Source: Ascidiella aspersa (taxonomy: Eukaryota). Taken from it: a DNA stretch of 64,000 bases. The DNA lies in NCBI GenBank assembly GCA_963924565.1, contig OZ004613.1, positions 6,696,001 through 6,760,000 on the forward strand. Reading direction: 5' to 3'. Both the position numbers and the translations under genes were made by a program. Positions 21,076 to 54,506 of this stretch are shown here, piece by piece. Each line of letters starts with the position of its first letter. Within the stretch, counting starts at the first letter, position 1. The notes beneath the pieces are model-generated. The model made no database searches and was not told the DNA's origin. It saw only the letters and a list, made by a program, of their open reading frames with translations.

Positions 21076-21290
21076 AAACCCGTAACCCAAACTATAGCCC
21101 AAACCCGAACCAACCCCTAACCGAACCCCTAACACAAACCCAACCCCTAATCCAAACCAAGATAAAACCCCTAACCCAAACCCTAACCGAACCCCTAACA
21201 CAAACCCAACCCCTAATCCAAATCCAACCTCTAATCAAGCCCAAAACATAACCCCAAACCCAACCCCTAATCCTACCCCTAACCCAACCC
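21076..21290. repeat. Degenerate telomere-like (CCCTAA/AACCC) tract
   Basis: Runs of ccctaa/cccaaa hexamers; a 42-nt block is repeated at 21115 and 21181. Confidence 0.8.
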
Positions 21291-21825
21291 ATGATTCAAC
21301 AAAACTAACGTTTCGTGTAACAAAATTTTAAGTAACTTTTTGTTCCGAGAATTGTTCCCGGATGCTAATGTAGAAATGTAAGTCATTTCGTTATTTTGTT
21401 TATTGTTTAATGACATGTTGTTGTGTAAAGCAGCCAACAGTGGCTGGGTTTCTTGCTGAAACACACGCTACCAATACTTTATATATACTTAACACCATTC
21501 CCAATTAAAGATATATTTTCCAGTTAAAAATGACTAAGAATGAAACGTTTTGCAAAAAGCATATTGACACAAAAGTTTGAACAAAAATCGGGGAGGTTAA
21601 CAAAGACAAAAACGATTTGACCACAACAAAGCGCGAAAACACATAATTATAAACAAAAGATAACCATTGTAATGATACAAGCTCGCGACTGTTCATTTGA
21701 CTCAACGCAACGCCTACAGAGGTGGAAACCATCTCATTACAAACATGTTGAGATATAATAAATGTGGATTATTCGATATAATTGGTGATAACCATCTGTA
21801 AAAAAATATTTCACCGGGGAATATT

Positions 21826-22662
21826 TCATGCAAATAAACCACCAGATATTTGGAGTGTCGCTCCATTAACGTAAGAGCTTTCATCGCTTGCCAGGAACAA
21901 ACAAGCATTAGCAACTTCAATCGGCTTTCCAAGGCGCCTCATTGGAATCATCGCCTTTAACGTCTCAAACTTAGCAACTTCTACTTGCTTTCCAAAGCGC
22001 CCCATCGGTATCAATGGCCTGACGGCTTCAAGCTTCACCGGGTCAAAATTGTTTTGGATCAGAGTATCAATTACACCTGGCGTGACAGCATTGCACCTGA
22101 CACCGAACTTTCCTACTTCAATGCAAGTTGTCTTTGTGAAAGCATTCAAGCCGGCTTTAGAAGCAGCGTAGCTGGCATGATCTTCCACTCCGACCTGCCC
22201 AGCTAAACTGGACACATTCACGATACTTGCGCCTGTTGCATCCTTGTTCTTACCAAGCTCTAGTCGCCGAAGAAACTCCTTCGTGAAAGTGAAGACGCCG
22301 AATAGATTGGTGCTTAAGACCTCGTTGAAAGAAGCCAGGCTTGTTTGAACGATTGGAGACAAAGGCGCAACACCAGCGCAGTTTACCAAAACGTTGCAAT
22401 TTTGTCCGAACTGAGAAAGTGTCATTGAAAAAGACTCAGACGCGGATTTTTCCTCAGTTACATCACATTGAACCATGGCGACATTTTCCTTATATGTGAC
22501 ACTAAGCTTGTCGTAGACAGATTGCAGGTTTTCTAAATTCCGACCCACCATCATGACATTGGCACCTTCGGCCAGAAAGCGTTCGCAAATAGCTTCCCCG
22601 ATGCCCCCTGCGGCTCCAGTGACAATCGCCACTTTACCGTTTAACCTACCAACTTCCGACAT
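21826..22662 (-). CDS. HSD17B8-like: Classical SDR (SDR-9), 278 aa including a 21-aa paralog-derived insertion, NADP-type
   Basis: ATG (MSEVGR) at 22662; all motifs present; in-frame 63-nt insertion at 21910-21972. Confidence 0.85.
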   Translation of the reverse strand: MSEVGRLNGKVAIVTGAAGGIGEAICERFLAEGANVMMVGRNLENLQSVYDKLSVTYKENVAMVQCDVTEEKSASESFSMTLSQFGQNCNVLVNCAGVAPLSPIVQTSLASFNEVLSTNLFGVFTFTKEFLRRLELGKNKDATGASIVNVSSLAGQVGVEDHASYAASKAGLNAFTKTTCIEVGKFGVRCNAVTPGVIDTLIQNNFDPVKLEAVRPLIPMGRFGKQVEVAKFETLKAMIPMRRLGKPIEVANACLFLASDESSYVNGATLQISGGLFA

Positions 22663-24124
22663 TTTAGACCTGCTGGAACACAACGCGTAATGCTGAAAAT
22701 TCTCAAAAGTTGATCCCTCTGACTTATTCAATGCATTGACGAATTCACAGCTAAACTTACTGACCTACTTTCAAGTTAAAGTGCAACTACGTTAAAACAG
22801 TTCGCCTCGCTGTGGTAATAATTAACCACCTCCATCTCCTCTTTTCACTCACCAATTTAATTCTCTTTTTTTTCGCTTTTACGTCCACTCTTTTCCACAG
22901 CTCTCTCTACGAGAAAAATGGATAGTGCATATTTGGCCGAAGTCAGCAGCATTTGATGCCAGGGAGAGGTCATTTATCCCAAGAGCAAACTGGTTCACCA
23001 TACAACCTTTCTGGGGCTATTTAAACACCCACAAAGTGATTTGGTGGGATTAGGGAACAAAAAACAAAAACAATGCACATCACGTAAAATTAAATTTATT
23101 AGTACCAACACAAACAAGGATAAACCAAACCCTAACACAAATCAATGTTTCCACACTGGTTGATTTGTGCAGACCCGGTGGGCGGTGATACAGGTGTAGT
23201 GACATGTATAACTAGTTATAATATTTGCCGTGACATGAACAGAGTCGTGTGCCTTTTTCGATTACTCGTTTCACAGCATCAGATCTCTTTCTCTCCTTCC
23301 TCTCTCTCCTCTTACTCTCACTATCTCGCAATGTAATTTAGTGTTAGGCCTTTGACAGTCTGATCCCAGGGAGCGAAGAGTCGCCCGTTCTAATGCTAAT
23401 AAATTGGACTAATAAACTGATAGGAATCATATATACGGAGTCATAGGAATCCAACAATAGTCCAAATAAACATTAAAGACATCCTCAAACCGCTACACAG
23501 GCGAATAGTCAGATCATGGCCTGCTAGTTGAGTAGCCCTGGTGTATACACTCTTTAATTACCCTGGTGTATACACTTTTTAATTTACATTTGACTTGCTT
23601 TGTCAGAAAAAGTTTCTTAGGTCCTAGATTTTGAGTTAATATTCAAGTCACATGTCCATCGCTGCCACATTCTGTGAAAAAATACAAAAAATTAAGATTA
23701 ATAAGACGTTTAGTAGAAATATCAGAGGCCATACAGAAGTATGTATCATTTTGATTGACTGTAATATAAATAAAGAGTTGTTCCAAACGTTCAAAATGAT
23801 ATACTTCTGTATAAAAAAATATATTGACGTGAATCAAGGCGGAATTTAGGGTACTGGATCCATTGCGTCAAACAGGTTTATATTATTATTGCTGAAAATA
23901 TTGATAAGGTGAAACATAAATCTCCAAACAAATTAATTTATTAGGGAGAACTGTGAAACCAGCAGACAAGATGTGCGTTTCTAAAAAATGTGAATATATA
24001 TACAAATAGTACAAAAGGGTTTAACTTACAACACTTGAAATACGTTGTGAATTATTTGCACGAAGTTCATTGTGGAATAAAATATTTTCAAAGTGCCTTG
24101 CTGTATTTTTTGATTCATTTAGAA

Positions 24125-24848: not shown

Positions 24849-25124
24849 ATTTAGAATCTAGATAAAAAACATTAGAGATTTCGCTAATTCTTTGTCCCGT
24901 TTGAAAAGGTAGGATGGATACATCCGTGCCAAACACAACGGTAACACAGGGTATATCGGGTAACACAGCAACTTGTGTAATGCCTGAATGGTTTGGTCTT
25001 TGTCACTATATGACTTTCTCGCTTGCCTGCCGTTCTGGAATTGTACGGCAAGTCGAGGTGTAAAGCAATTCAGTCATTTCGTCAGTTAGAATTTTGTGAA
25101 AAGGCTTCTCGTTTTAAACTGAAA

Positions 25125-25778
25125 ATGTCGCAAGTTGGCAGGTTACTCGGTAAAGTGGCGATTGTTACTGGAGCCGCAGGGGGCATCGGGGAAGCTATTT
25201 GCGAACGCTTTCTGGCCGAAGGTGCTAAAGTTATGATGGTGGGTCGGAATTTAGAAAACCTGCAATCTGTCTACGAAAAACTTAATGTCATATATAAGGA
25301 AAACGTCGCAATGGTTCAAGGCGATGTAACTCAGGAGAAATCCGCGTCTGAGTCTTTTTCAATCACACTTTCTAAGTTCGGTCAAAATTGTAACGTTTTG
25401 GTAAACTGCGCTGGTGTTGCGCCTTTGTCTCCAGGCGCAAGTATCGTGAATGTGTCCAGTTTAGCTGGGCAGGTCGGAGTGGAAGATCATGCCAGCTACG
25501 CTGCTTCTAAAGCCGGCTTGAATGCTTTCACAAAGACAACTTGCATTGAAGTAGGAAAGTTCGGTGTCAGGTGCAATGCTGTCACGCCAGGTGTAATTGA
25601 TACTCTGATCCAAAACAATTTTGACCCGGTGAAGCTTGAAGCCTTCAAGCAAATGATTCCAATGGGTCGCTTTGGAAAGCAAGTAGAAGTTGCTAATGCT
25701 TGTTTGTTCCTTGCAAGCGATGAAAGCTCTTACATTAATGGAGCGACGCTCCAAATATCTGGTGGTTTATTTGCATAA
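25125..25778 (+). CDS. SDR-10, inverted twin of SDR-9 with an in-frame 120-nt deletion (217 aa; probably catalytically impaired or a pseudogene)
   Basis: ATG at 25125; the junction cca|ggc at 25433/25434 removes IVQTSLAS...KNKDAT (40 aa). The 3' flank 25779-26070 is the reverse complement of ~21505-21825. Confidence 0.7.
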   Translation: MSQVGRLLGKVAIVTGAAGGIGEAICERFLAEGAKVMMVGRNLENLQSVYEKLNVIYKENVAMVQGDVTQEKSASESFSITLSKFGQNCNVLVNCAGVAPLSPGASIVNVSSLAGQVGVEDHASYAASKAGLNAFTKTTCIEVGKFGVRCNAVTPGVIDTLIQNNFDPVKLEAFKQMIPMGRFGKQVEVANACLFLASDESSYINGATLQISGGLFA

Positions 25779-26479
25779 AATATTCCCAGGTGAAATAATT
25801 TTTCACGGTTGGTTTTCTTCAATGATGTCGATAATCCACATTTATAATATCTCAACATGTTTGTAATGAGTTGGTTTACACCAGTAAAGGCGTTGCGTCA
25901 GCAAGATAAACAGTCGCGAGCTTGTATCATTAAAATGGTTAAATGTTGTGTATAATTATGTGTTTTCGAGCTTTGTTATTGTCAAATATGTTTTTAACTT
26001 CTCCGATTTTTGTTCAAAGTTTTGTGTCATTGTGCATTCTTAGTCATATTTTACTGGAAAACATATCTTTTGTATCGTAATCCAACAAGCATTACTTGTA
26101 GATAAAAAAAATTACCATGTATAACTTTATTTGAGTATTAACCATGCAACTAAATTCATTAATAAATGCCCTTTATTGTGTAAACCATAACATAAAGCGT
26201 ATGTTTCTATGTAACAGGACACGCTACCCGTGCTTTATTAGTATTTTCCTTATTAATGACATTCCTTGTAGTAAAAGCCGTAGACCAGATTTGGAAAACT
26301 GGATTTCTTTTAGCGTTTTCAATAAGATTAGAATTAAAATTAGAGCATTTCAATTTTCCAAATTAGATTAGAATTAGAATTAGATCATTTTGAGTTTATA
26401 ATTATAGAACTACTAAATTGTTAAAAAAACGAATTTTAACTAAAATATGAACTGGAATTACATTTGATTGTTCACAACC

Positions 26480-32326: not shown

Positions 32327-33100
32327 ATGGCGCAAGTTGGTAGGTTAAACGGTAAAGTGACCGTTGTCACTGGAGCCGCAGGGGGCATCGGGGAAGCTAT
32401 TTGCGAACGCTTTCTGGCCGAAGGTGCCAACGTAATGATGGTGGATTGCCATTTGGAAAATCTCAAAGTTGTTCATGGAAAATTGAATGCCAGTTATGAA
32501 GGTAAAGTGGCGATGATTCGATGCGACGTAACGGAAGAGAATTCGGCTTGTGAGGCGTTCACGGCTGCAAACGAGCAGTTCAAGCAGAATTGTAACGTTT
32601 TGGTTAACTGCGCTGGTATTCCGGGCATGTCTCCAATTGTCGAAGCAAGCCTGGCTTTCTTCAATAAGGTATTAAGCGTCAACCTTAAGGGCGCCTTCAC
32701 TTTCACGAGAGAGTTCTTACGGCGACTTGAGCTTGGAGAGAAGAAGGATACGACAGGTGCCAGTATAGTTAACATCGCCAGCATTGCAGCCAATACAGGA
32801 TTTGAAAATTTATCTGCCTACGGTGCTTCTAAAGCTGGACTGGTCGCTTTCACAAAGACGACGTGCATTGAGGTGGGAAAATACGGTGTCAGGTGCAATG
32901 CGCTAACGCCAGGTGCAATTGACACAGCTTTCATAAGCGATACCCAAAAGGAACAGTTTGAGACGTTAAAGGCGATGATTCCAATGAGGCGCCTTGGAAA
33001 GCCGATTGAAGTTGCTAATGCTTGTTTGTTCCTGGCAAGCGATGAAAGCTCTTACATTAATGGGGCAACACTTCAAGTATCTGGTGGTTCTATGGCGTGA
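32327..33100 (+). CDS. HSD17B8-like: Classical SDR, HSD17B8/FabG-like (SDR-13), 257 aa, NAD-type (Asp40)
   Basis: Intact, YGASK; gttttgcag|ttttataATG. Confidence 0.92.
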   Translation: MAQVGRLNGKVTVVTGAAGGIGEAICERFLAEGANVMMVDCHLENLKVVHGKLNASYEGKVAMIRCDVTEENSACEAFTAANEQFKQNCNVLVNCAGIPGMSPIVEASLAFFNKVLSVNLKGAFTFTREFLRRLELGEKKDTTGASIVNIASIAANTGFENLSAYGASKAGLVAFTKTTCIEVGKYGVRCNALTPGAIDTAFISDTQKEQFETLKAMIPMRRLGKPIEVANACLFLASDESSYINGATLQVSGGSMA

Positions 33101-35786: not shown

Positions 35787-36560
35787 ATGGCACCATTAGG
35801 TAGATTACAAGGTAAAGTGGCGATTGTCACTGGAGCCGCAGGGGGCATCGGGGAAGCTATTTGCGAACGTTTTTTGGCCGAAGATGCCAAAGTCATGATG
35901 CTGGGTCGGAATGAAGAAAATCTCAAAAATGTTTACGAAAAGTTAGTTGCGAAGTACAAAGAAAATGTGGCCATGATTCAATGTGACGTAGCTGAAGAGA
36001 ATTCGGCTTGTGAGGCTTTTACTGCTGTAAGCAAGCAATTCGGAGGGAATTGTAACGTTTTGGTTAACTGCGCTGGTATTCCCGGCATGTCTCCAATCGT
36101 CGAAACAAGCCTGGATTCATTCAATAAGGTATTAAGCGTCAACCTTAAAGGCGCCTTCACTTTCACGAGAGAGTTCTTACGGCGACTTGAGCTTGCTGAG
36201 AACAAGGATTCAACAGGAGCAAGCATAGTTAACATCTCCAGCATTGCAGCCAATACAGGATTTGAAAATTTATCTGCCTACGGTGCTTCTAAAGCTGGAC
36301 TGGTCGCTTTCACAAAGACGACGTGCATTGAGGTGGGAAAATACGGTGTCAGGTGCAATGCGCTAACGCCAGGTGTAATTGACACAGCTTTCATAAGCGA
36401 TACCCAAAAGGAACAGTTTGAGACGTTAAAGGCGATGATTCCAATGAGGCGCATTGGAAAGCCGATTGAAGTTGCTAATGCTTGTTTGTTCCTGGCAAGC
36501 GATGAAAGCTCCTACATTAATGGGGCAACACTTCAAGTATCTGGTGGTTCTATGGCGTGA
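35787..36560 (+). CDS. HSD17B8-like: Classical SDR (SDR-14), 257 aa, hybrid of an SDR-16-like N-terminus and an SDR-13-like C-terminus, NADP-type
   Basis: Intact ORF from MAPLGR; see findings for the mosaic structure. Confidence 0.9.
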   Translation: MAPLGRLQGKVAIVTGAAGGIGEAICERFLAEDAKVMMLGRNEENLKNVYEKLVAKYKENVAMIQCDVAEENSACEAFTAVSKQFGGNCNVLVNCAGIPGMSPIVETSLDSFNKVLSVNLKGAFTFTREFLRRLELAENKDSTGASIVNISSIAANTGFENLSAYGASKAGLVAFTKTTCIEVGKYGVRCNALTPGVIDTAFISDTQKEQFETLKAMIPMRRIGKPIEVANACLFLASDESSYINGATLQVSGGSMA

Positions 36561-41633: not shown

Positions 41634-42407
41634 ATGGCACCATTAGGTAGATTACAAGGTAAAGTGGCCATTGTCACTGGAGCCGCAGGGGGCATCGGGG
41701 AAGCTATTTGCGAACGTTTTTTGGCCGAAGATGCCAAAGTCATGATGCTGGGTCGGAATGAAGAAAATCTCAAAAATGTTTACGAAAAGTTAGTTGCGAA
41801 GTACAAAGAAAACGTGGCCATGATTCAATGTGACGTAGCTGAAGAGAATTCGGCTTGTGAGGCTTTTACTGCTGTAAGCAAGCAATTCGGAGGGAATTGT
41901 AACGTTTTGGTTAACTGCGCTGGTATTCCCGGCATGTCTCCAATCGTCGAAACAAGCCTGGATTCATTCAATAAGGTATTAAGCGTCAACCTTAAAGGCG
42001 CCTTCACTTTCACGAGAGAGTTCTTACGGCGACTTGAGCTTGCTGAGAACAAGGATTCAACAGGAGCAAGTATAGTTAACATCTCCAGCATTGCAGCCAA
42101 TACAGGATTTGAAAATTTATCTGCCTACGGTGCTTCTAAAGCTGGACTGGTCGCTTTCACAAAGACGACGTGCATTGAGGTGGGAAAATACGGTGTCAGG
42201 TGCAATGCGCTAACGCCAGGTGTAATTGACACAGCTTTCATAAGCGATACCCAAAAGGAACAGTTTGAGACGTTAAAGGCGATGATTCCAATGAGGCGCA
42301 TTGGAAAGCCGATTGAAGTTGCTAATGCTTGTTTGTTCCTGGCAAGCGATGAAAGCTCCTACATTAATGGGGCAACACTTCAAGTATCTGGTGGTTCTAT
42401 GGCGTGA
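41634..42407 (+). CDS. HSD17B8-like: Classical SDR (SDR-15), protein identical to SDR-14
   Basis: Identical translation with a few synonymous differences (gcg/gcc, aat/aac, agc/agt). Confidence 0.88.
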   Translation: MAPLGRLQGKVAIVTGAAGGIGEAICERFLAEDAKVMMLGRNEENLKNVYEKLVAKYKENVAMIQCDVAEENSACEAFTAVSKQFGGNCNVLVNCAGIPGMSPIVETSLDSFNKVLSVNLKGAFTFTREFLRRLELAENKDSTGASIVNISSIAANTGFENLSAYGASKAGLVAFTKTTCIEVGKYGVRCNALTPGVIDTAFISDTQKEQFETLKAMIPMRRIGKPIEVANACLFLASDESSYINGATLQVSGGSMA

Positions 42408-46275: not shown

Positions 46276-47052
46276 ATGGCACCATTAGGTAGATTACAAG
46301 GTAAAGTGGCCATTGTCACTGGAGCCGCAGGGGGCATCGGGGAAGCTATTTGCGAACGTTTTTTGGCCGAAGATGCCAAAGTCATGATGCTGGGTCGGAA
46401 TGAAGAAAATCTCAAAAATGTTTACGAAAAGTTAGTTGCGAAGTACAAAGAAAATGTGGCCATGATTCGATGCGATGTAGCTGAAGAGAATTCGGCTTGT
46501 GAGGTCTTTACTGCTGTTAAAAAGCAATTCGGACAGAATTGCAATGTTCTGGTTAATAATGCTGCTGTCTTGTCAGTGTCGTCGATCGTTGACACAACCA
46601 TGGATTCATTCAACCAAGCATTGGACGTCAACCTGAACGGCGTCTTTATCTATACAAAGGAATTTCTCAAGCGGCTCAAACTTACCGAGGGTCAAAATGC
46701 AGCAGGCGCAAACATCGTTAACGTCACCAGCATGGCGGGTAGGCTGGGATTCAAAGATTGCTCTGCCTACTCTGCTTCTAAAGGTGGAGTGGATGCTTTC
46801 ACAAAGACGACATGCATTGAGGTGGCAAGGTTCGGTGTCAGGTGCAATGGGGTTTCGCCCTGTGTTATTGATACTCCATTGCTACACCGCTCGTTTAACA
46901 AAGCCTATATCGATGCTGTCAAGCCAATGATTCCGATGGGGCGCTTTGGAAAGCCGGTAGAAGTTGCTAATGCTTGTTTGTTCCTGGCAAGCGATGAAAG
47001 CTCTTACATCGATGGAGCGATCTTAGAAATATCTGGTGGTTTTATGGCCTAA
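46276..47052 (+). CDS. HSD17B8-like: Classical SDR, HSD17B8/FabG-like (SDR-16), 258 aa, NADP-type
   Basis: Intact, YSASK; the first 64 residues are identical to SDR-14/15 and the C-terminal two thirds are distinct. Confidence 0.92.
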   Translation: MAPLGRLQGKVAIVTGAAGGIGEAICERFLAEDAKVMMLGRNEENLKNVYEKLVAKYKENVAMIRCDVAEENSACEVFTAVKKQFGQNCNVLVNNAAVLSVSSIVDTTMDSFNQALDVNLNGVFIYTKEFLKRLKLTEGQNAAGANIVNVTSMAGRLGFKDCSAYSASKGGVDAFTKTTCIEVARFGVRCNGVSPCVIDTPLLHRSFNKAYIDAVKPMIPMGRFGKPVEVANACLFLASDESSYIDGAILEISGGFMA

Positions 47053-52722: not shown

Positions 52723-53121
52723 CTTTAAGGTTTTACACAGTAGGCCTATGCCTTGCGAAGGATGTGGATAAACATAACTAGGTTCAATCTGACATAGACA
52801 ACGCGATATGCACTACCGGGACCTTTGCAAACTTTCAGAGATGATATCACAATTAGGGTCAAACATGTATTTGTAGGAAATCGCTGATTCCAAAGAGCAC
52901 TTGCAAAAACAAAGCGTGAAAAAATCGTTATATGTTTAAAAATAGTACAAAGATATTCTAAATTGGAGGTCATAGGGCACATAAATAAGATTCGACCCAT
53001 TGCTCGAAATGATGGCATTATTCCTATAATTTTGGAAAATACACCAAAGAGCCACTGCTCCATAGCCGTATGAACATTAAACTTGCACAAAAGTCTTGTA
53101 CAGAAAAGTGAGCGAGGTATT

Positions 53122-53608
53122 AATTACGTTATTGAATCAATGCAATGGTCATGTTGCAATTACGTTATTGAATCAATGCAATGGTCATGTTGCAATTACG
53201 TTATTGAATCAATGCAATGGTCATGTTGCAATTACATTATTGAATCAATGCAATGGTCATGTTGCAATTACGTTATTGAATCAATGCAATGGTCATGTTG
53301 CAATTACGTTATTGAATCAATGCAATGGTCATGTTGCAATTACGTTATTGAATCAATGCAATGGTCATGTTGCAATTACGTTATTGAATCAATGCAATGG
53401 TCATGTTGCAATTACGTTATTGAATCAATGCAATGGTCATGTTGCAATTACGTTATTGAATCAATGCAATGGTCATGTTGCAATTACGTTATTGAATCAA
53501 TGCAATGGTCATGTTGCAATTACGTTATTGAATCAATGCAATGGTCATGTTGCAATTACGTTATTGAATCAATGCAATGGTCATGTTGCAATTACGTTAT
53601 TGAATCAA
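53122..53608. repeat. 36-bp minisatellite, 13.5 copies
   Basis: Unit aattacgttattgaatcaatgcaatggtcatgttgc; a single g>a variant in copy 4; no spacers. Confidence 0.97.
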
Positions 53609-54506
53609 GCGATTAGGCAACAATTCATATAATGTAGGTTAAATAGAGTAGTTTTGTTAGGCGATGCCCTGTGGCAGTTAGAGCCACATGGCAAATTACA
53701 TGCAGCACTGAAGTCATGGTAAAGTAAGGAGTTACATGAAGGCTGTATGTCATTAGAGGTTATAGTTTAACAGGCTGTTTTCTTCGGCAACCTACTATAA
53801 CCCCTGGGACAGGGTATACCCCACAAGATAAGACCTGGGTGAAACTACGCATAAGAAAAGGGGAATAGTTTCTCGCCTTTGCAAGTGTTCGAAAATTCAA
53901 CTGTTCGAAATTGGTAACATGTTGTTGGTTTACCTATGGAACGTCTAATATAGTTGTATTTTATGGCGATACGGGCACCCTTTATTTACACAAAAAGGAC
54001 AGCTACCGGTGCGGTACAAAAAGAAGTCACGCAAAAATATATATGACTAAAACAAAGAAATCTGTAAAGGTATAATGTTTACAGTATCCTCAGCCAAATA
54101 TGTCACTTTTAAGGCTTAGTTAGATTATACACCATATACACCACTAATCGAATCAGTCGATCAATGCAGGCTATAGAAAAACAACTAACCCGTGGTGAGG
54201 TTCGCTCATACGACCTCGGCCATAGCAGAAACGTATATCTACCACAACGTATATCCACATTGACGAAATAAACTTGGTATCGGACGAGTACGAACACTAC
54301 CACTTGGGATCGAGTACCTAACCGTATTCGAAAACATCAGTTAAACCTATACTAGGCATAATAAGTAATGTATTTTTTTCTCGTTGACAAAAGAGCGAAA
54401 CGCTTAATTAAGCTAAGCTTTCTTTCCATAGCCCAGGCTTATTATTCTGCTTTTAGCAGTTGCCTGGCCGTGACACTTTGAGTTGACCGGATAAATAGGC
54501 GCTTCG

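What the first reader, a model, noticed from the sequence alone, without database searches (positions are those of the whole stretch)
21910..21972. 63-nt in-frame insertion copied from a different paralog 11 kb away on the opposite strand
Seen: SDR-9 reads ..[39 protein letters not shown]. The insert is not a self-duplication. It matches SDR-13 positions 32954-33016 at 62 of 63 nt, including cgcCtt (SDR-14/15 have cgcAtt), and the gene then returns to its own SDR-9/10-type end (ggagcgac..caaatatctggtggtttatttgca). The insert ends inside the third invariant island. Inference: a very recent out-of-register template switch or ectopic conversion, which is direct evidence of cassette transfer between paralogs and gives a protein with two tandem lid segments.
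Basis: seen in the sequence. Interest (0 to 1): 0.78.

Follow-up and report, generated by a model that had tools for sequence, protein, structure and literature searches.

The report
Paralog-templated 63-nt insertion in SDR gene
One gene in a large array of short-chain dehydrogenase copies carries an extra in-frame 21-codon piece copied out of register from a different copy; this is a clear but mechanistically ordinary scar of DNA break repair that used the wrong template.

Summary
The intact 278-aa SDR gene at 21826-22662(-) has 63 extra in-frame bases (21910-21972) that its inverted sister gene at 25125-25778(+) lacks. These bases match the paralog at 32954-33016(+) at 62 of 63. The one mismatch is the first base, which is native. 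From the second base on, identity to that paralog is 101/101 and runs into a conserved island, although the two genes are otherwise only 74% identical. The junction occurs once in the 308.6-Mb assembly. A broken paralog 45 kb away on the same strand matches the 63 bases equally well, so the donor is not uniquely fixed.

Raw Illumina reads cover the junction at normal depth, with no reads skipping the 63 bases. That argues against an assembly chimera, but it is not proof at the level of single reads.

Best reading: the strand entered the paralog by homology in the island, copied about 62 nt, and rejoined with only 1 nt of microhomology. This is an ectopic templated insertion, or out-of-register template switch.

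AlphaFold puts the copied segment in the canonical position. The native segment becomes a low-confidence extension of the substrate loop.

Seven substitutions clustered 27 nt upstream of the junction remain unexplained.

This is a new example of a known kind of event, of modest interest.

The parts
21826..22662 (-).
   Evidence: Translation. Pfam adh_short_C2 at 3.5e-59, split into two stretches at the insert. TGxxxGxG, N-S-Y-K and PG positions are kept (invariant columns).
21910..21972 (-). The 63 extra in-frame bases (21 codons, KFETLKAMIPMRRLGKPIEVA). The base at 21972 is native or shared, and the remaining 62 are donor-type.
   Evidence: 62/63 to 32954-33016. Absent from sister g08. The junction is unique in the genome.
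21871..21971 (-). Full tract of perfect identity to the donor paralog (101 nt). It comprises 62 nt of net insertion plus 39 nt of the conserved island, within which the switch back must lie.
   Evidence: Difference strings and alignment A1. The first recipient-specific base after the tract is 21870.
21973..22035 (-). Native homologous 63-nt segment (KLEAVRPLIPMGRFGKQVEVA), now the first of two tandem homologous segments. Like the insert, it ends in GAAGTTGCT.
   Evidence: Alignment with g08. HMMER aligns both segments to the same residues (205-221) of PDB 4ni5.
22000..22023 (-). Cluster of 7 substitutions relative to sister g08, 27 nt upstream of the junction, inside an otherwise 100% identical block
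   Evidence: 0 differences in 252 aligned nt before the cluster and 27 nt after it. No donor exists in the assembly for either version.
32327..33100 (+). The donor segment is 32955-33055.
25125..25778 (+). It shows the pre-insertion state and itself carries a 120-nt in-frame deletion at 25431/25432.
   Evidence: Inverted repeats I1-I6, alignment, and the 'skips 120' reads in X8.

Best explanation
This is a real, recent mutational event in one member of a large array of intronless SDR genes. The array has at least 39 C-terminal matches in the genome, and its nearest named relatives are tunicate HSD17B8-like / (3R)-3-hydroxyacyl-CoA dehydrogenase-like proteins.

Proposed course of events (inferred):
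1. A break, or a dissociated nascent strand, in g07 lay at the boundary between its variable loop segment and the conserved island that follows.
2. It paired with another paralog through that island, which is identical at the nucleotide level across paralogs.
3. Synthesis copied about 62 nt of the paralog's own loop segment.
4. The new end was joined back to the g07 end with only 1 nt of microhomology, one full segment (63 nt) out of register.

The event is therefore a homology-driven entry plus a non-homologous exit: aborted SDSA followed by end joining, or equivalently an out-of-register template switch.

What is shown:
- the composition of the junctions;
- the 101-nt perfect tract;
- the sister gene without the insert;
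- the intact ORF.

What is inferred:
- the break;
- the polarity of synthesis;
- the joining pathway.

Consequence for the protein: a 278-aa SDR that keeps all cofactor and catalytic motifs. The copied segment takes the canonical place before helix alpha-G. The native segment is pushed into the substrate-binding loop, lengthening it by 21 residues. Whether the enzyme still works is not known.
For: - Identity is 62/63, extending to 101/101, against 73.8% gene-wide identity and 45-48/63 for unrelated paralogs.
- Sister g08 lacks the insert and is 100% identical to g07 over 252 nt upstream, so the event is nested in a very young block.
- The junction is unique in the genome.
- Illumina raw DNA (X8) covers the junction bin at normal depth, with no 63-nt skip. 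Paralog reads are recognised as joints.
- The islands are invariant even at synonymous sites in 21 intact paralogs, which gives a perfect homology anchor.
- Mosaicism exists elsewhere in the array: a 179-nt identical run between two genes that are 79% identical overall.
- There is experimental precedent. In yeast, repair synthesis switches templates between 72%-identical sequences at short microhomologies, including out-of-frame misalignments, and is mutagenic (PMC12891019). In Drosophila, aborted SDSA is followed by end joining with templated insertions (PMC2895639).
- The AlphaFold model has mean pLDDT 90.9. Residues 230-250 (the copy) score above 90 and residues 201-230 score 45-59.
Against: - No per-read listing proves that a single read crosses both junctions.
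- X8 may come from the same individual as the assembly.
- Contigs of another individual (X1) have a hole at 21890-22023, so presence in the population is untested.
- RNA reads are few and mostly paralog-derived, so expression is not shown.
- The exact protein is not on record elsewhere, and the junction is absent from metagenome contigs.
- The 1-nt microhomology and the in-frame length are also what a two-step history could give.
- The AlphaFold placement may be driven by how the alignment placed the family on the second segment.
Confidence: 0.74

Rival explanations
1. Two-step history. First, g07's own 63-nt segment was duplicated in tandem. Later, an in-register gene conversion from a g11-type paralog overwrote the second copy and part of the island.
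For: The first codon of the insert (AAG) equals the first codon of the native segment (AAG CTT...), so the single mismatch to the donor is also explained this way. Conversion and mosaicism are frequent in this array. Microhomology-bounded tandem duplications arise during repair synthesis (PMC12891019).
Against: This needs two events. It also needs the left edge of the conversion tract to fall within 1-3 nt of the duplication junction, which is a coincidence. No self-duplicated intermediate exists anywhere in the genome. Both events would have to be younger than the 0-difference g07/g08 block.
Confidence: 0.13
2. One compound repair event with three partners. Repair synthesis on g07 used sister g08 for nt 428-690 (possibly from nt 268) and a g11-type gene for the insert plus island, and the two nascent ends were joined out of register. 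The 7-substitution patch and the private base at 21870 would be errors of that synthesis.
For: The 100% g07/g08 block ends at or just past the junction. The patch lies 27 nt from the junction, and a private G sits exactly at the end of the donor tract. No donor exists for the patch. Repair synthesis is mutagenic and prone to template jumps.
Against: Seven substitutions in 24 nt is very dense for polymerase error. g08's 120-nt deletion was not transferred, so either the tract or its direction must be constrained. Which gene carries the derived patch is unresolved.
Confidence: 0.08
3. Assembly, consensus or polishing chimera: the 63 nt were never in one molecule.
For: The tract is identical to a paralog, which is the kind of place where mis-assigned reads could corrupt a consensus. 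Contigs of run X1 do not bridge the site.
Against: Independent-technology raw reads (X8) give normal, continuous depth across 21940-21993 with no 63-nt skip and no loose ends listed at the junctions. Genuine paralog reads show up separately, as a joint with 32 foreign letters. An in-frame, exactly one-segment insertion flanked by unique sequence on both sides is not a typical polishing product. The assembly is highly contiguous (75 contigs).
Confidence: 0.05

Closest known systems
Interchromosomal / ectopic template switching during gene conversion (yeast ICTS; Hicks 2010, Tsaponina 2014, PMC12891019)
   Same: A short tract is copied from a roughly 72-74% identical homeologous sequence, with return to the original template. 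The junctions are at very short microhomology. Out-of-frame misalignments have been described, and associated mutagenesis is reported.
   Different: Here only one junction is homology-guided (the island). The other has 1 nt of microhomology and is a full 63 nt out of register, giving a net insertion rather than a replacement. This is a natural event in an animal genome, not a selected assay product.
Aborted SDSA followed by alternative end joining with templated insertions (Drosophila P-element gap repair, Pol theta; PMC2895639)
   Same: Synthesis from a homologous template, followed by dissociation and joining with little or no microhomology, leaving extra templated sequence.
   Different: In the fly assay the template is the sister chromatid or nearby flanks. 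Here it is a diverged paralog 11 kb (or 45 kb) away. The pathway and polymerase are not testable from sequence.
Non-allelic (interparalog) gene conversion in tandem gene families
   Same: Sequence is transferred between paralogs of one array. Mosaic genes are found elsewhere in the same array.
   Different: Ordinary conversion is in register and conserves length. This event adds a segment.
Classical SDRs of the FabG / HSD17B8 type (PDB 4ni5, 4nbu, 2pd6, 4cql)
   Same: Same fold and motifs. The best PDB matches have E-values of 1e-38 to 1e-34, and Pfam matches are adh_short_C2 and adh_short.
   Different: g07 has 21 extra residues between the substrate loop and helix alpha-G. None of the 120 listed homologues (242-290 aa, best 49% identity) shows a near-identical relative or evidence of this repeat.

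Membership tests
Classical short-chain dehydrogenase/reductase (SDR; Pfam adh_short / adh_short_C2) | Significant match to the family profile over the Rossmann core | tested here: met
   PF13561 at 3.5e-59 (200.7 bits, cut-off 27) and PF00106 at 3.1e-49.
Classical short-chain dehydrogenase/reductase (SDR; Pfam adh_short / adh_short_C2) | Cofactor motif TGxxxGxG and N-A-G motif | tested here: met
   T15, G16, G20, G22, N94, A96 and G97 are invariant or nearly invariant columns and are present in g07. The sequence reads VTGAAGGIG ... NCAG.
Classical short-chain dehydrogenase/reductase (SDR; Pfam adh_short / adh_short_C2) | Catalytic tetrad N-S-Y-K | tested here: met
   N119, S152, Y165 and K169 are conserved columns and are present in g07.
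Classical short-chain dehydrogenase/reductase (SDR; Pfam adh_short / adh_short_C2) | Canonical single-copy C-terminal segment (loop into alpha-G, then beta-7) | tested here: not met
   The segment is present twice in tandem. The Pfam match is split into 2 stretches, and both copies align to residues 205-221 of 4ni5. The fold is still predicted with pLDDT 90.9, with the second copy in place.
Classical short-chain dehydrogenase/reductase (SDR; Pfam adh_short / adh_short_C2) | Oxidoreductase activity | not testable with these tools
   Needs expression and an enzyme assay.
Templated insertion by ectopic repair synthesis (SDSA plus end joining / template switch) | The inserted sequence has an identifiable template elsewhere in the genome | tested here: met
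   101/101 identity to 32955-33055. A second candidate, L005, matches at 62/63.
Templated insertion by ectopic repair synthesis (SDSA plus end joining / template switch) | One junction lies in shared homology and the other has little or no microhomology | tested here: met
   The right junction lies somewhere in the 39-nt island shared by donor and recipient. The left junction shares 1 nt.
Templated insertion by ectopic repair synthesis (SDSA plus end joining / template switch) | The pre-insertion state is documented | tested here: inconclusive
   Only the paralogous sister g08 shows the uninterrupted state. No empty allele of g07 itself was seen, and the other-individual contigs have a hole there.
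Templated insertion by ectopic repair synthesis (SDSA plus end joining / template switch) | Dependence on a DNA break and on specific repair factors | not testable with these tools
   Inference from model-organism work.

The most novel reading that the evidence does not exclude
The array may be a cassette-shuffling system. The nucleotide-invariant islands are conserved even at synonymous sites in 21 paralogs. They could act as fixed recombination anchors that let the variable substrate-loop segments be exchanged among 40 or more SDR genes. That would diversify substrate specificity much as conversion-based repertoires do. The 63-nt insertion would be a mis-registered product of this process, and possibly a way to evolve longer lids.
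Probability: 0.1. Interest if true: 0.7.

Novelty: new member of a known kind. Interest (0 to 1): 0.3.

Why it matters
This is an unusually legible natural example of how break repair with a paralog as template can add a whole structural segment to an enzyme in one step while keeping the reading frame. Donor, recipient and an uninterrupted sister gene all lie within 12 kb. It shows that sequence moves between members of this array, and that the conserved islands can serve as entry points. If the 278-aa protein is expressed and active, it would be a fresh case of lid-length innovation in an SDR. Otherwise it is an ordinary mutational scar in a fast-evolving gene family.

Tried and rejected
- **Chance or conservation as the cause of the match.** Rejected: unrelated paralogs match at 45-48/63 and the two genes are 74% identical overall.
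- **Pure self-duplication.** Rejected: the native segment and the insert agree at only 45 of 63 positions (compared in a window shifted by 2 nt).
- **Unequal crossing-over between g07 and g11.** Rejected: they lie on opposite strands, and both flanks of the insert are g07/g08-type.
- **A better donor elsewhere in the genome.** None found. L005 ties on the 63 nt but has 2 mismatches in the following island.
- **A donor for the 7-substitution patch.** None found for either the g07 or the g08 version; the best other match is 88-90%.
- **Heteroduplex repair against g11 as the source of the patch.** Rejected: the g07 states at the checked patch sites are not g11-like.
- **Independent occurrence of the exact protein.** Not on record.
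- **The junction 26-mer in JGI metagenome contigs.** 0 hits.
- **Earlier notes of this scan.** Nothing found, by place or by words.
- **Other-individual contigs.** X1 and X3 do not cover 21940-21993 at all, so they say nothing about polymorphism.
- **RNA run X9.** Only 24 reads were laid, 18 of them partial and mostly carrying paralog differences, so there is no verdict on expression.

Full report
**What is there**

The window holds about 13 full or nearly full copies and 2 fragments of an intronless short-chain dehydrogenase/reductase (SDR) gene.
- The whole 308.6-Mb, 75-contig assembly has at least 39 matches to the C-terminal part. Most lie on the same contig between 6.38 and 6.75 Mb.
- The nearest named relatives are tunicate proteins annotated as (3R)-3-hydroxyacyl-CoA dehydrogenase-like or estradiol 17-beta-dehydrogenase 8-like (Clavelina 45%, Ciona 42-44%, Styela 39%). 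The best database hit of any kind is only 49% identical.
- The organism is therefore probably a tunicate whose own proteins are not in the database. This is an inference.

**The recipient gene**

- It matches Pfam adh_short_C2 at 3.5e-59, with the match split into two stretches.
- It keeps the TGxxxGxG, N-A-G, N-S-Y-K and P-G positions.

**The observation**

- The mismatch is the very first base. That base equals the base that would follow natively (GCT-AAT in the sister gene, GCT-AAG in g07).
- From the second base on, identity to g11 is perfect for 101 nt (21971 down to 21871 = 32955-33055). It continues through a 39-nt island shared by nearly all paralogs and ends at a base private to g07 (21870).
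- Elsewhere g07 and g11 are 73.8% identical. Unrelated paralogs match the 63-nt segment at only 45-48 positions. The match is therefore copying, not conservation.
- The junction-bearing 171-mer occurs once in the genome.

One correction: a fragmented paralog outside the window (L005, G000:C7:6673073-6673184, the same strand as g07, about 45 kb away) also matches at 62/63.
- It has two mismatches in the island that follows. g11 is therefore only mildly favoured as donor.

**Is it an assembly artefact?**

Raw Illumina genomic reads (X8, about 6x sampled) were laid on 21400-23000.
- Summed depth is 8.1 in the bin 21940-21993, which contains the non-homologous junction. Unique flanking bins give 6-13.
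- No joint skipping 63 nt was listed, and no loose ends were listed at 21909/21910 or 21972/21973.
- Reads from paralogs were recognised for what they are. Three reads join 21971 to 22067 with 32 foreign letters that are the g11-type upstream sequence. Three reads skip 120 nt, which is the deletion of sister g08.
- This supports the assembled structure with a second technology.
- It is not a per-read proof, and the run may come from the assembled individual.
- A heterozygous empty allele cannot be excluded at this depth.
- Contigs of another individual (X1, about 2% diverged in the flanks) and of a marine metagenome (X3) do not cover 21940-21993 at all, so they are uninformative.
- RNA reads (X9) are few and mostly paralog-like, so there is no verdict on expression.
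- The exact protein is not on record elsewhere, and the junction 26-mer is absent from JGI metagenome contigs.

**Context: the sister gene and timing**

g07 and g08 are arms of an inverted repeat (21608-22665 and 25122-25994, with a 2.46-kb spacer). Their divergence is strikingly uneven:
- 22 differences in CDS nt 1-267 (8%).
- No differences in the next 252 aligned nt. g08 has a 120-nt in-frame deletion within this stretch.
- Seven differences packed into 24 nt (window 22000-22023; VRPL in g07, FKQM in g08).
- No differences in the last 27 nt before the junction.
- Three or four scattered differences in the tail.

The insertion therefore sits in a block that was homogenised between the sisters very recently. 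The insertion itself shows 0/101 differences from its donor, which gives an upper bound of roughly 3% divergence.

**Mechanism (inferred)**

Both the native segment and the insert end in GAAGTTGCT, followed by the island. The simplest history has four steps:
1. A break or a dissociated nascent strand at the segment/island boundary of g07.
2. Pairing with a g11-type paralog through the island.
3. Synthesis of about 62 nt of the paralog's loop segment.
4. Joining to the other g07 end with 1 nt of microhomology, one segment out of register.

The island is a plausible anchor. Across 21 intact paralogs its codons are uniform even at synonymous sites, unlike the rest of the gene.

Experimental precedent exists for every step:
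- Yeast repair synthesis jumps between 72%-identical templates at short microhomologies. It sometimes does so out of frame, and it is mutagenic (PMC12891019).
- In Drosophila, aborted SDSA is completed by end joining that leaves templated insertions (PMC2895639).

The in-frame length may be luck (one chance in three) or survivorship.

**Rivals**

- **Self-duplication followed by in-register conversion.** This also explains the first-base mismatch, because the native segment begins with AAG too. It needs two events and a tract edge within 1-3 nt of the duplication junction, and no intermediate exists.
- **A compound three-partner event (g08 plus a g11-type donor).** This would tie in the patch and the private base at 21870. 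Seven changes in 24 nt is dense for polymerase error, however, and the direction of change in the patch is unresolved. Neither version has a donor in the assembly.
- **An assembly chimera.** I rate this at about 5%.

**Consequence for the protein**

HMMER aligns both the native segment (about residues 208-225) and the copy (230-246) to the same residues 205-221 of PDB 4ni5.

An AlphaFold2 model was built with a 40-sequence alignment (mean pLDDT 90.9, pTM 0.89).
- It places the copied segment (230-250) confidently before helix alpha-G (247-258).
- A helix at 224-238 runs across the junction.
- Residues 201-230, which include the native segment, have pLDDT of 45-59.

The practical effect would therefore be a 21-residue longer, probably flexible, substrate-binding loop rather than two equivalent lids. 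The alignment placed the family on the second segment, which may bias this result. Activity is untested.

**Verdict**

The event is real with good probability. It is a clean natural example of an ectopic templated insertion in a gene family that shows other mosaics (a 179-nt identical run between two genes that are 79% identical overall). It is a new member of a known kind of event, and interest is modest. The more ambitious reading, with the islands as anchors of a cassette-shuffling system, is not excluded but is unsupported beyond the synonymous-site invariance.

Noticed in passing
window 22000-22023 (g07) versus 25644-25667 (g08, my estimate from the alignment): Seven substitutions in 24 nt sit inside an otherwise 100% identical g07/g08 block, 27 nt from the insertion junction. 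Neither version has a donor anywhere in the assembly, and the direction of change is unresolved.
   Followed up: partly
window 25431/25432 (g08): The sister gene has a 120-nt in-frame deletion that removes about 40 residues of the core (the equivalent of g07 nt 308-427). Three Illumina reads show the same skip. The ORF stays open, but the protein probably cannot fold as an SDR.
   Followed up: partly
window, all SDR copies; e.g. 22560-22645 and 21871-21909 in g07: Two islands ([26 protein letters not shown] and [17 protein letters not shown]) are nearly invariant at the nucleotide level, including synonymous sites, across 21 intact paralogs that are otherwise about 72-77% identical. The cause could be concerted evolution confined to the islands or a constraint at the nucleotide level.
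   Followed up: partly
window 41634-42404 versus 46276-47049; also 35787-36557: These genes are mosaics. The genes at 41634 and 46276 share a 179-nt identical run at the 5' end but are only 79% identical overall. The genes at 35787 and 41634 encode identical proteins (99.6% nt identity).
   Followed up: partly
window 21077-21291: A degenerate telomere-like array (CCCTAA/CCCAAA variants, about 215 nt) lies about 535 nt downstream of the g07 stop codon. It is the only such array in the window. Any role as a fragile site is speculation.
   Followed up: no
window 53122-53608: A 36-nt unit is repeated 13.5 times at 99% identity. It overlaps two mechanical ORFs at 53083-53632.
   Followed up: no
window 33907, 37356, 38548, 39738, 43203, 44393: The same 19-nt x 3 mini-array recurs six times between the SDR genes at 32-47 kb. 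It marks a repeated intergenic unit of about 1.19 kb within the recent tandem duplications.
   Followed up: no
L005 = G000:C7:6671573-6674684: This is a fragmented g11-type paralog. Only pieces matching g07 nt 1-338, 538-594 and 692-828 are present. It matches the insert as well as g11 does (62/63).
   Followed up: partly
window 21868 and 21986: X8 reads show possible heterozygous or paralog-derived variants. At 21868, A>G appears in 7 of 20 reads, and some of those reads are otherwise clean. At 21986, T>G (Q to P in GKQVEVA) appears in 2 of 6 DNA reads and 3 of 3 RNA reads.
   Followed up: no
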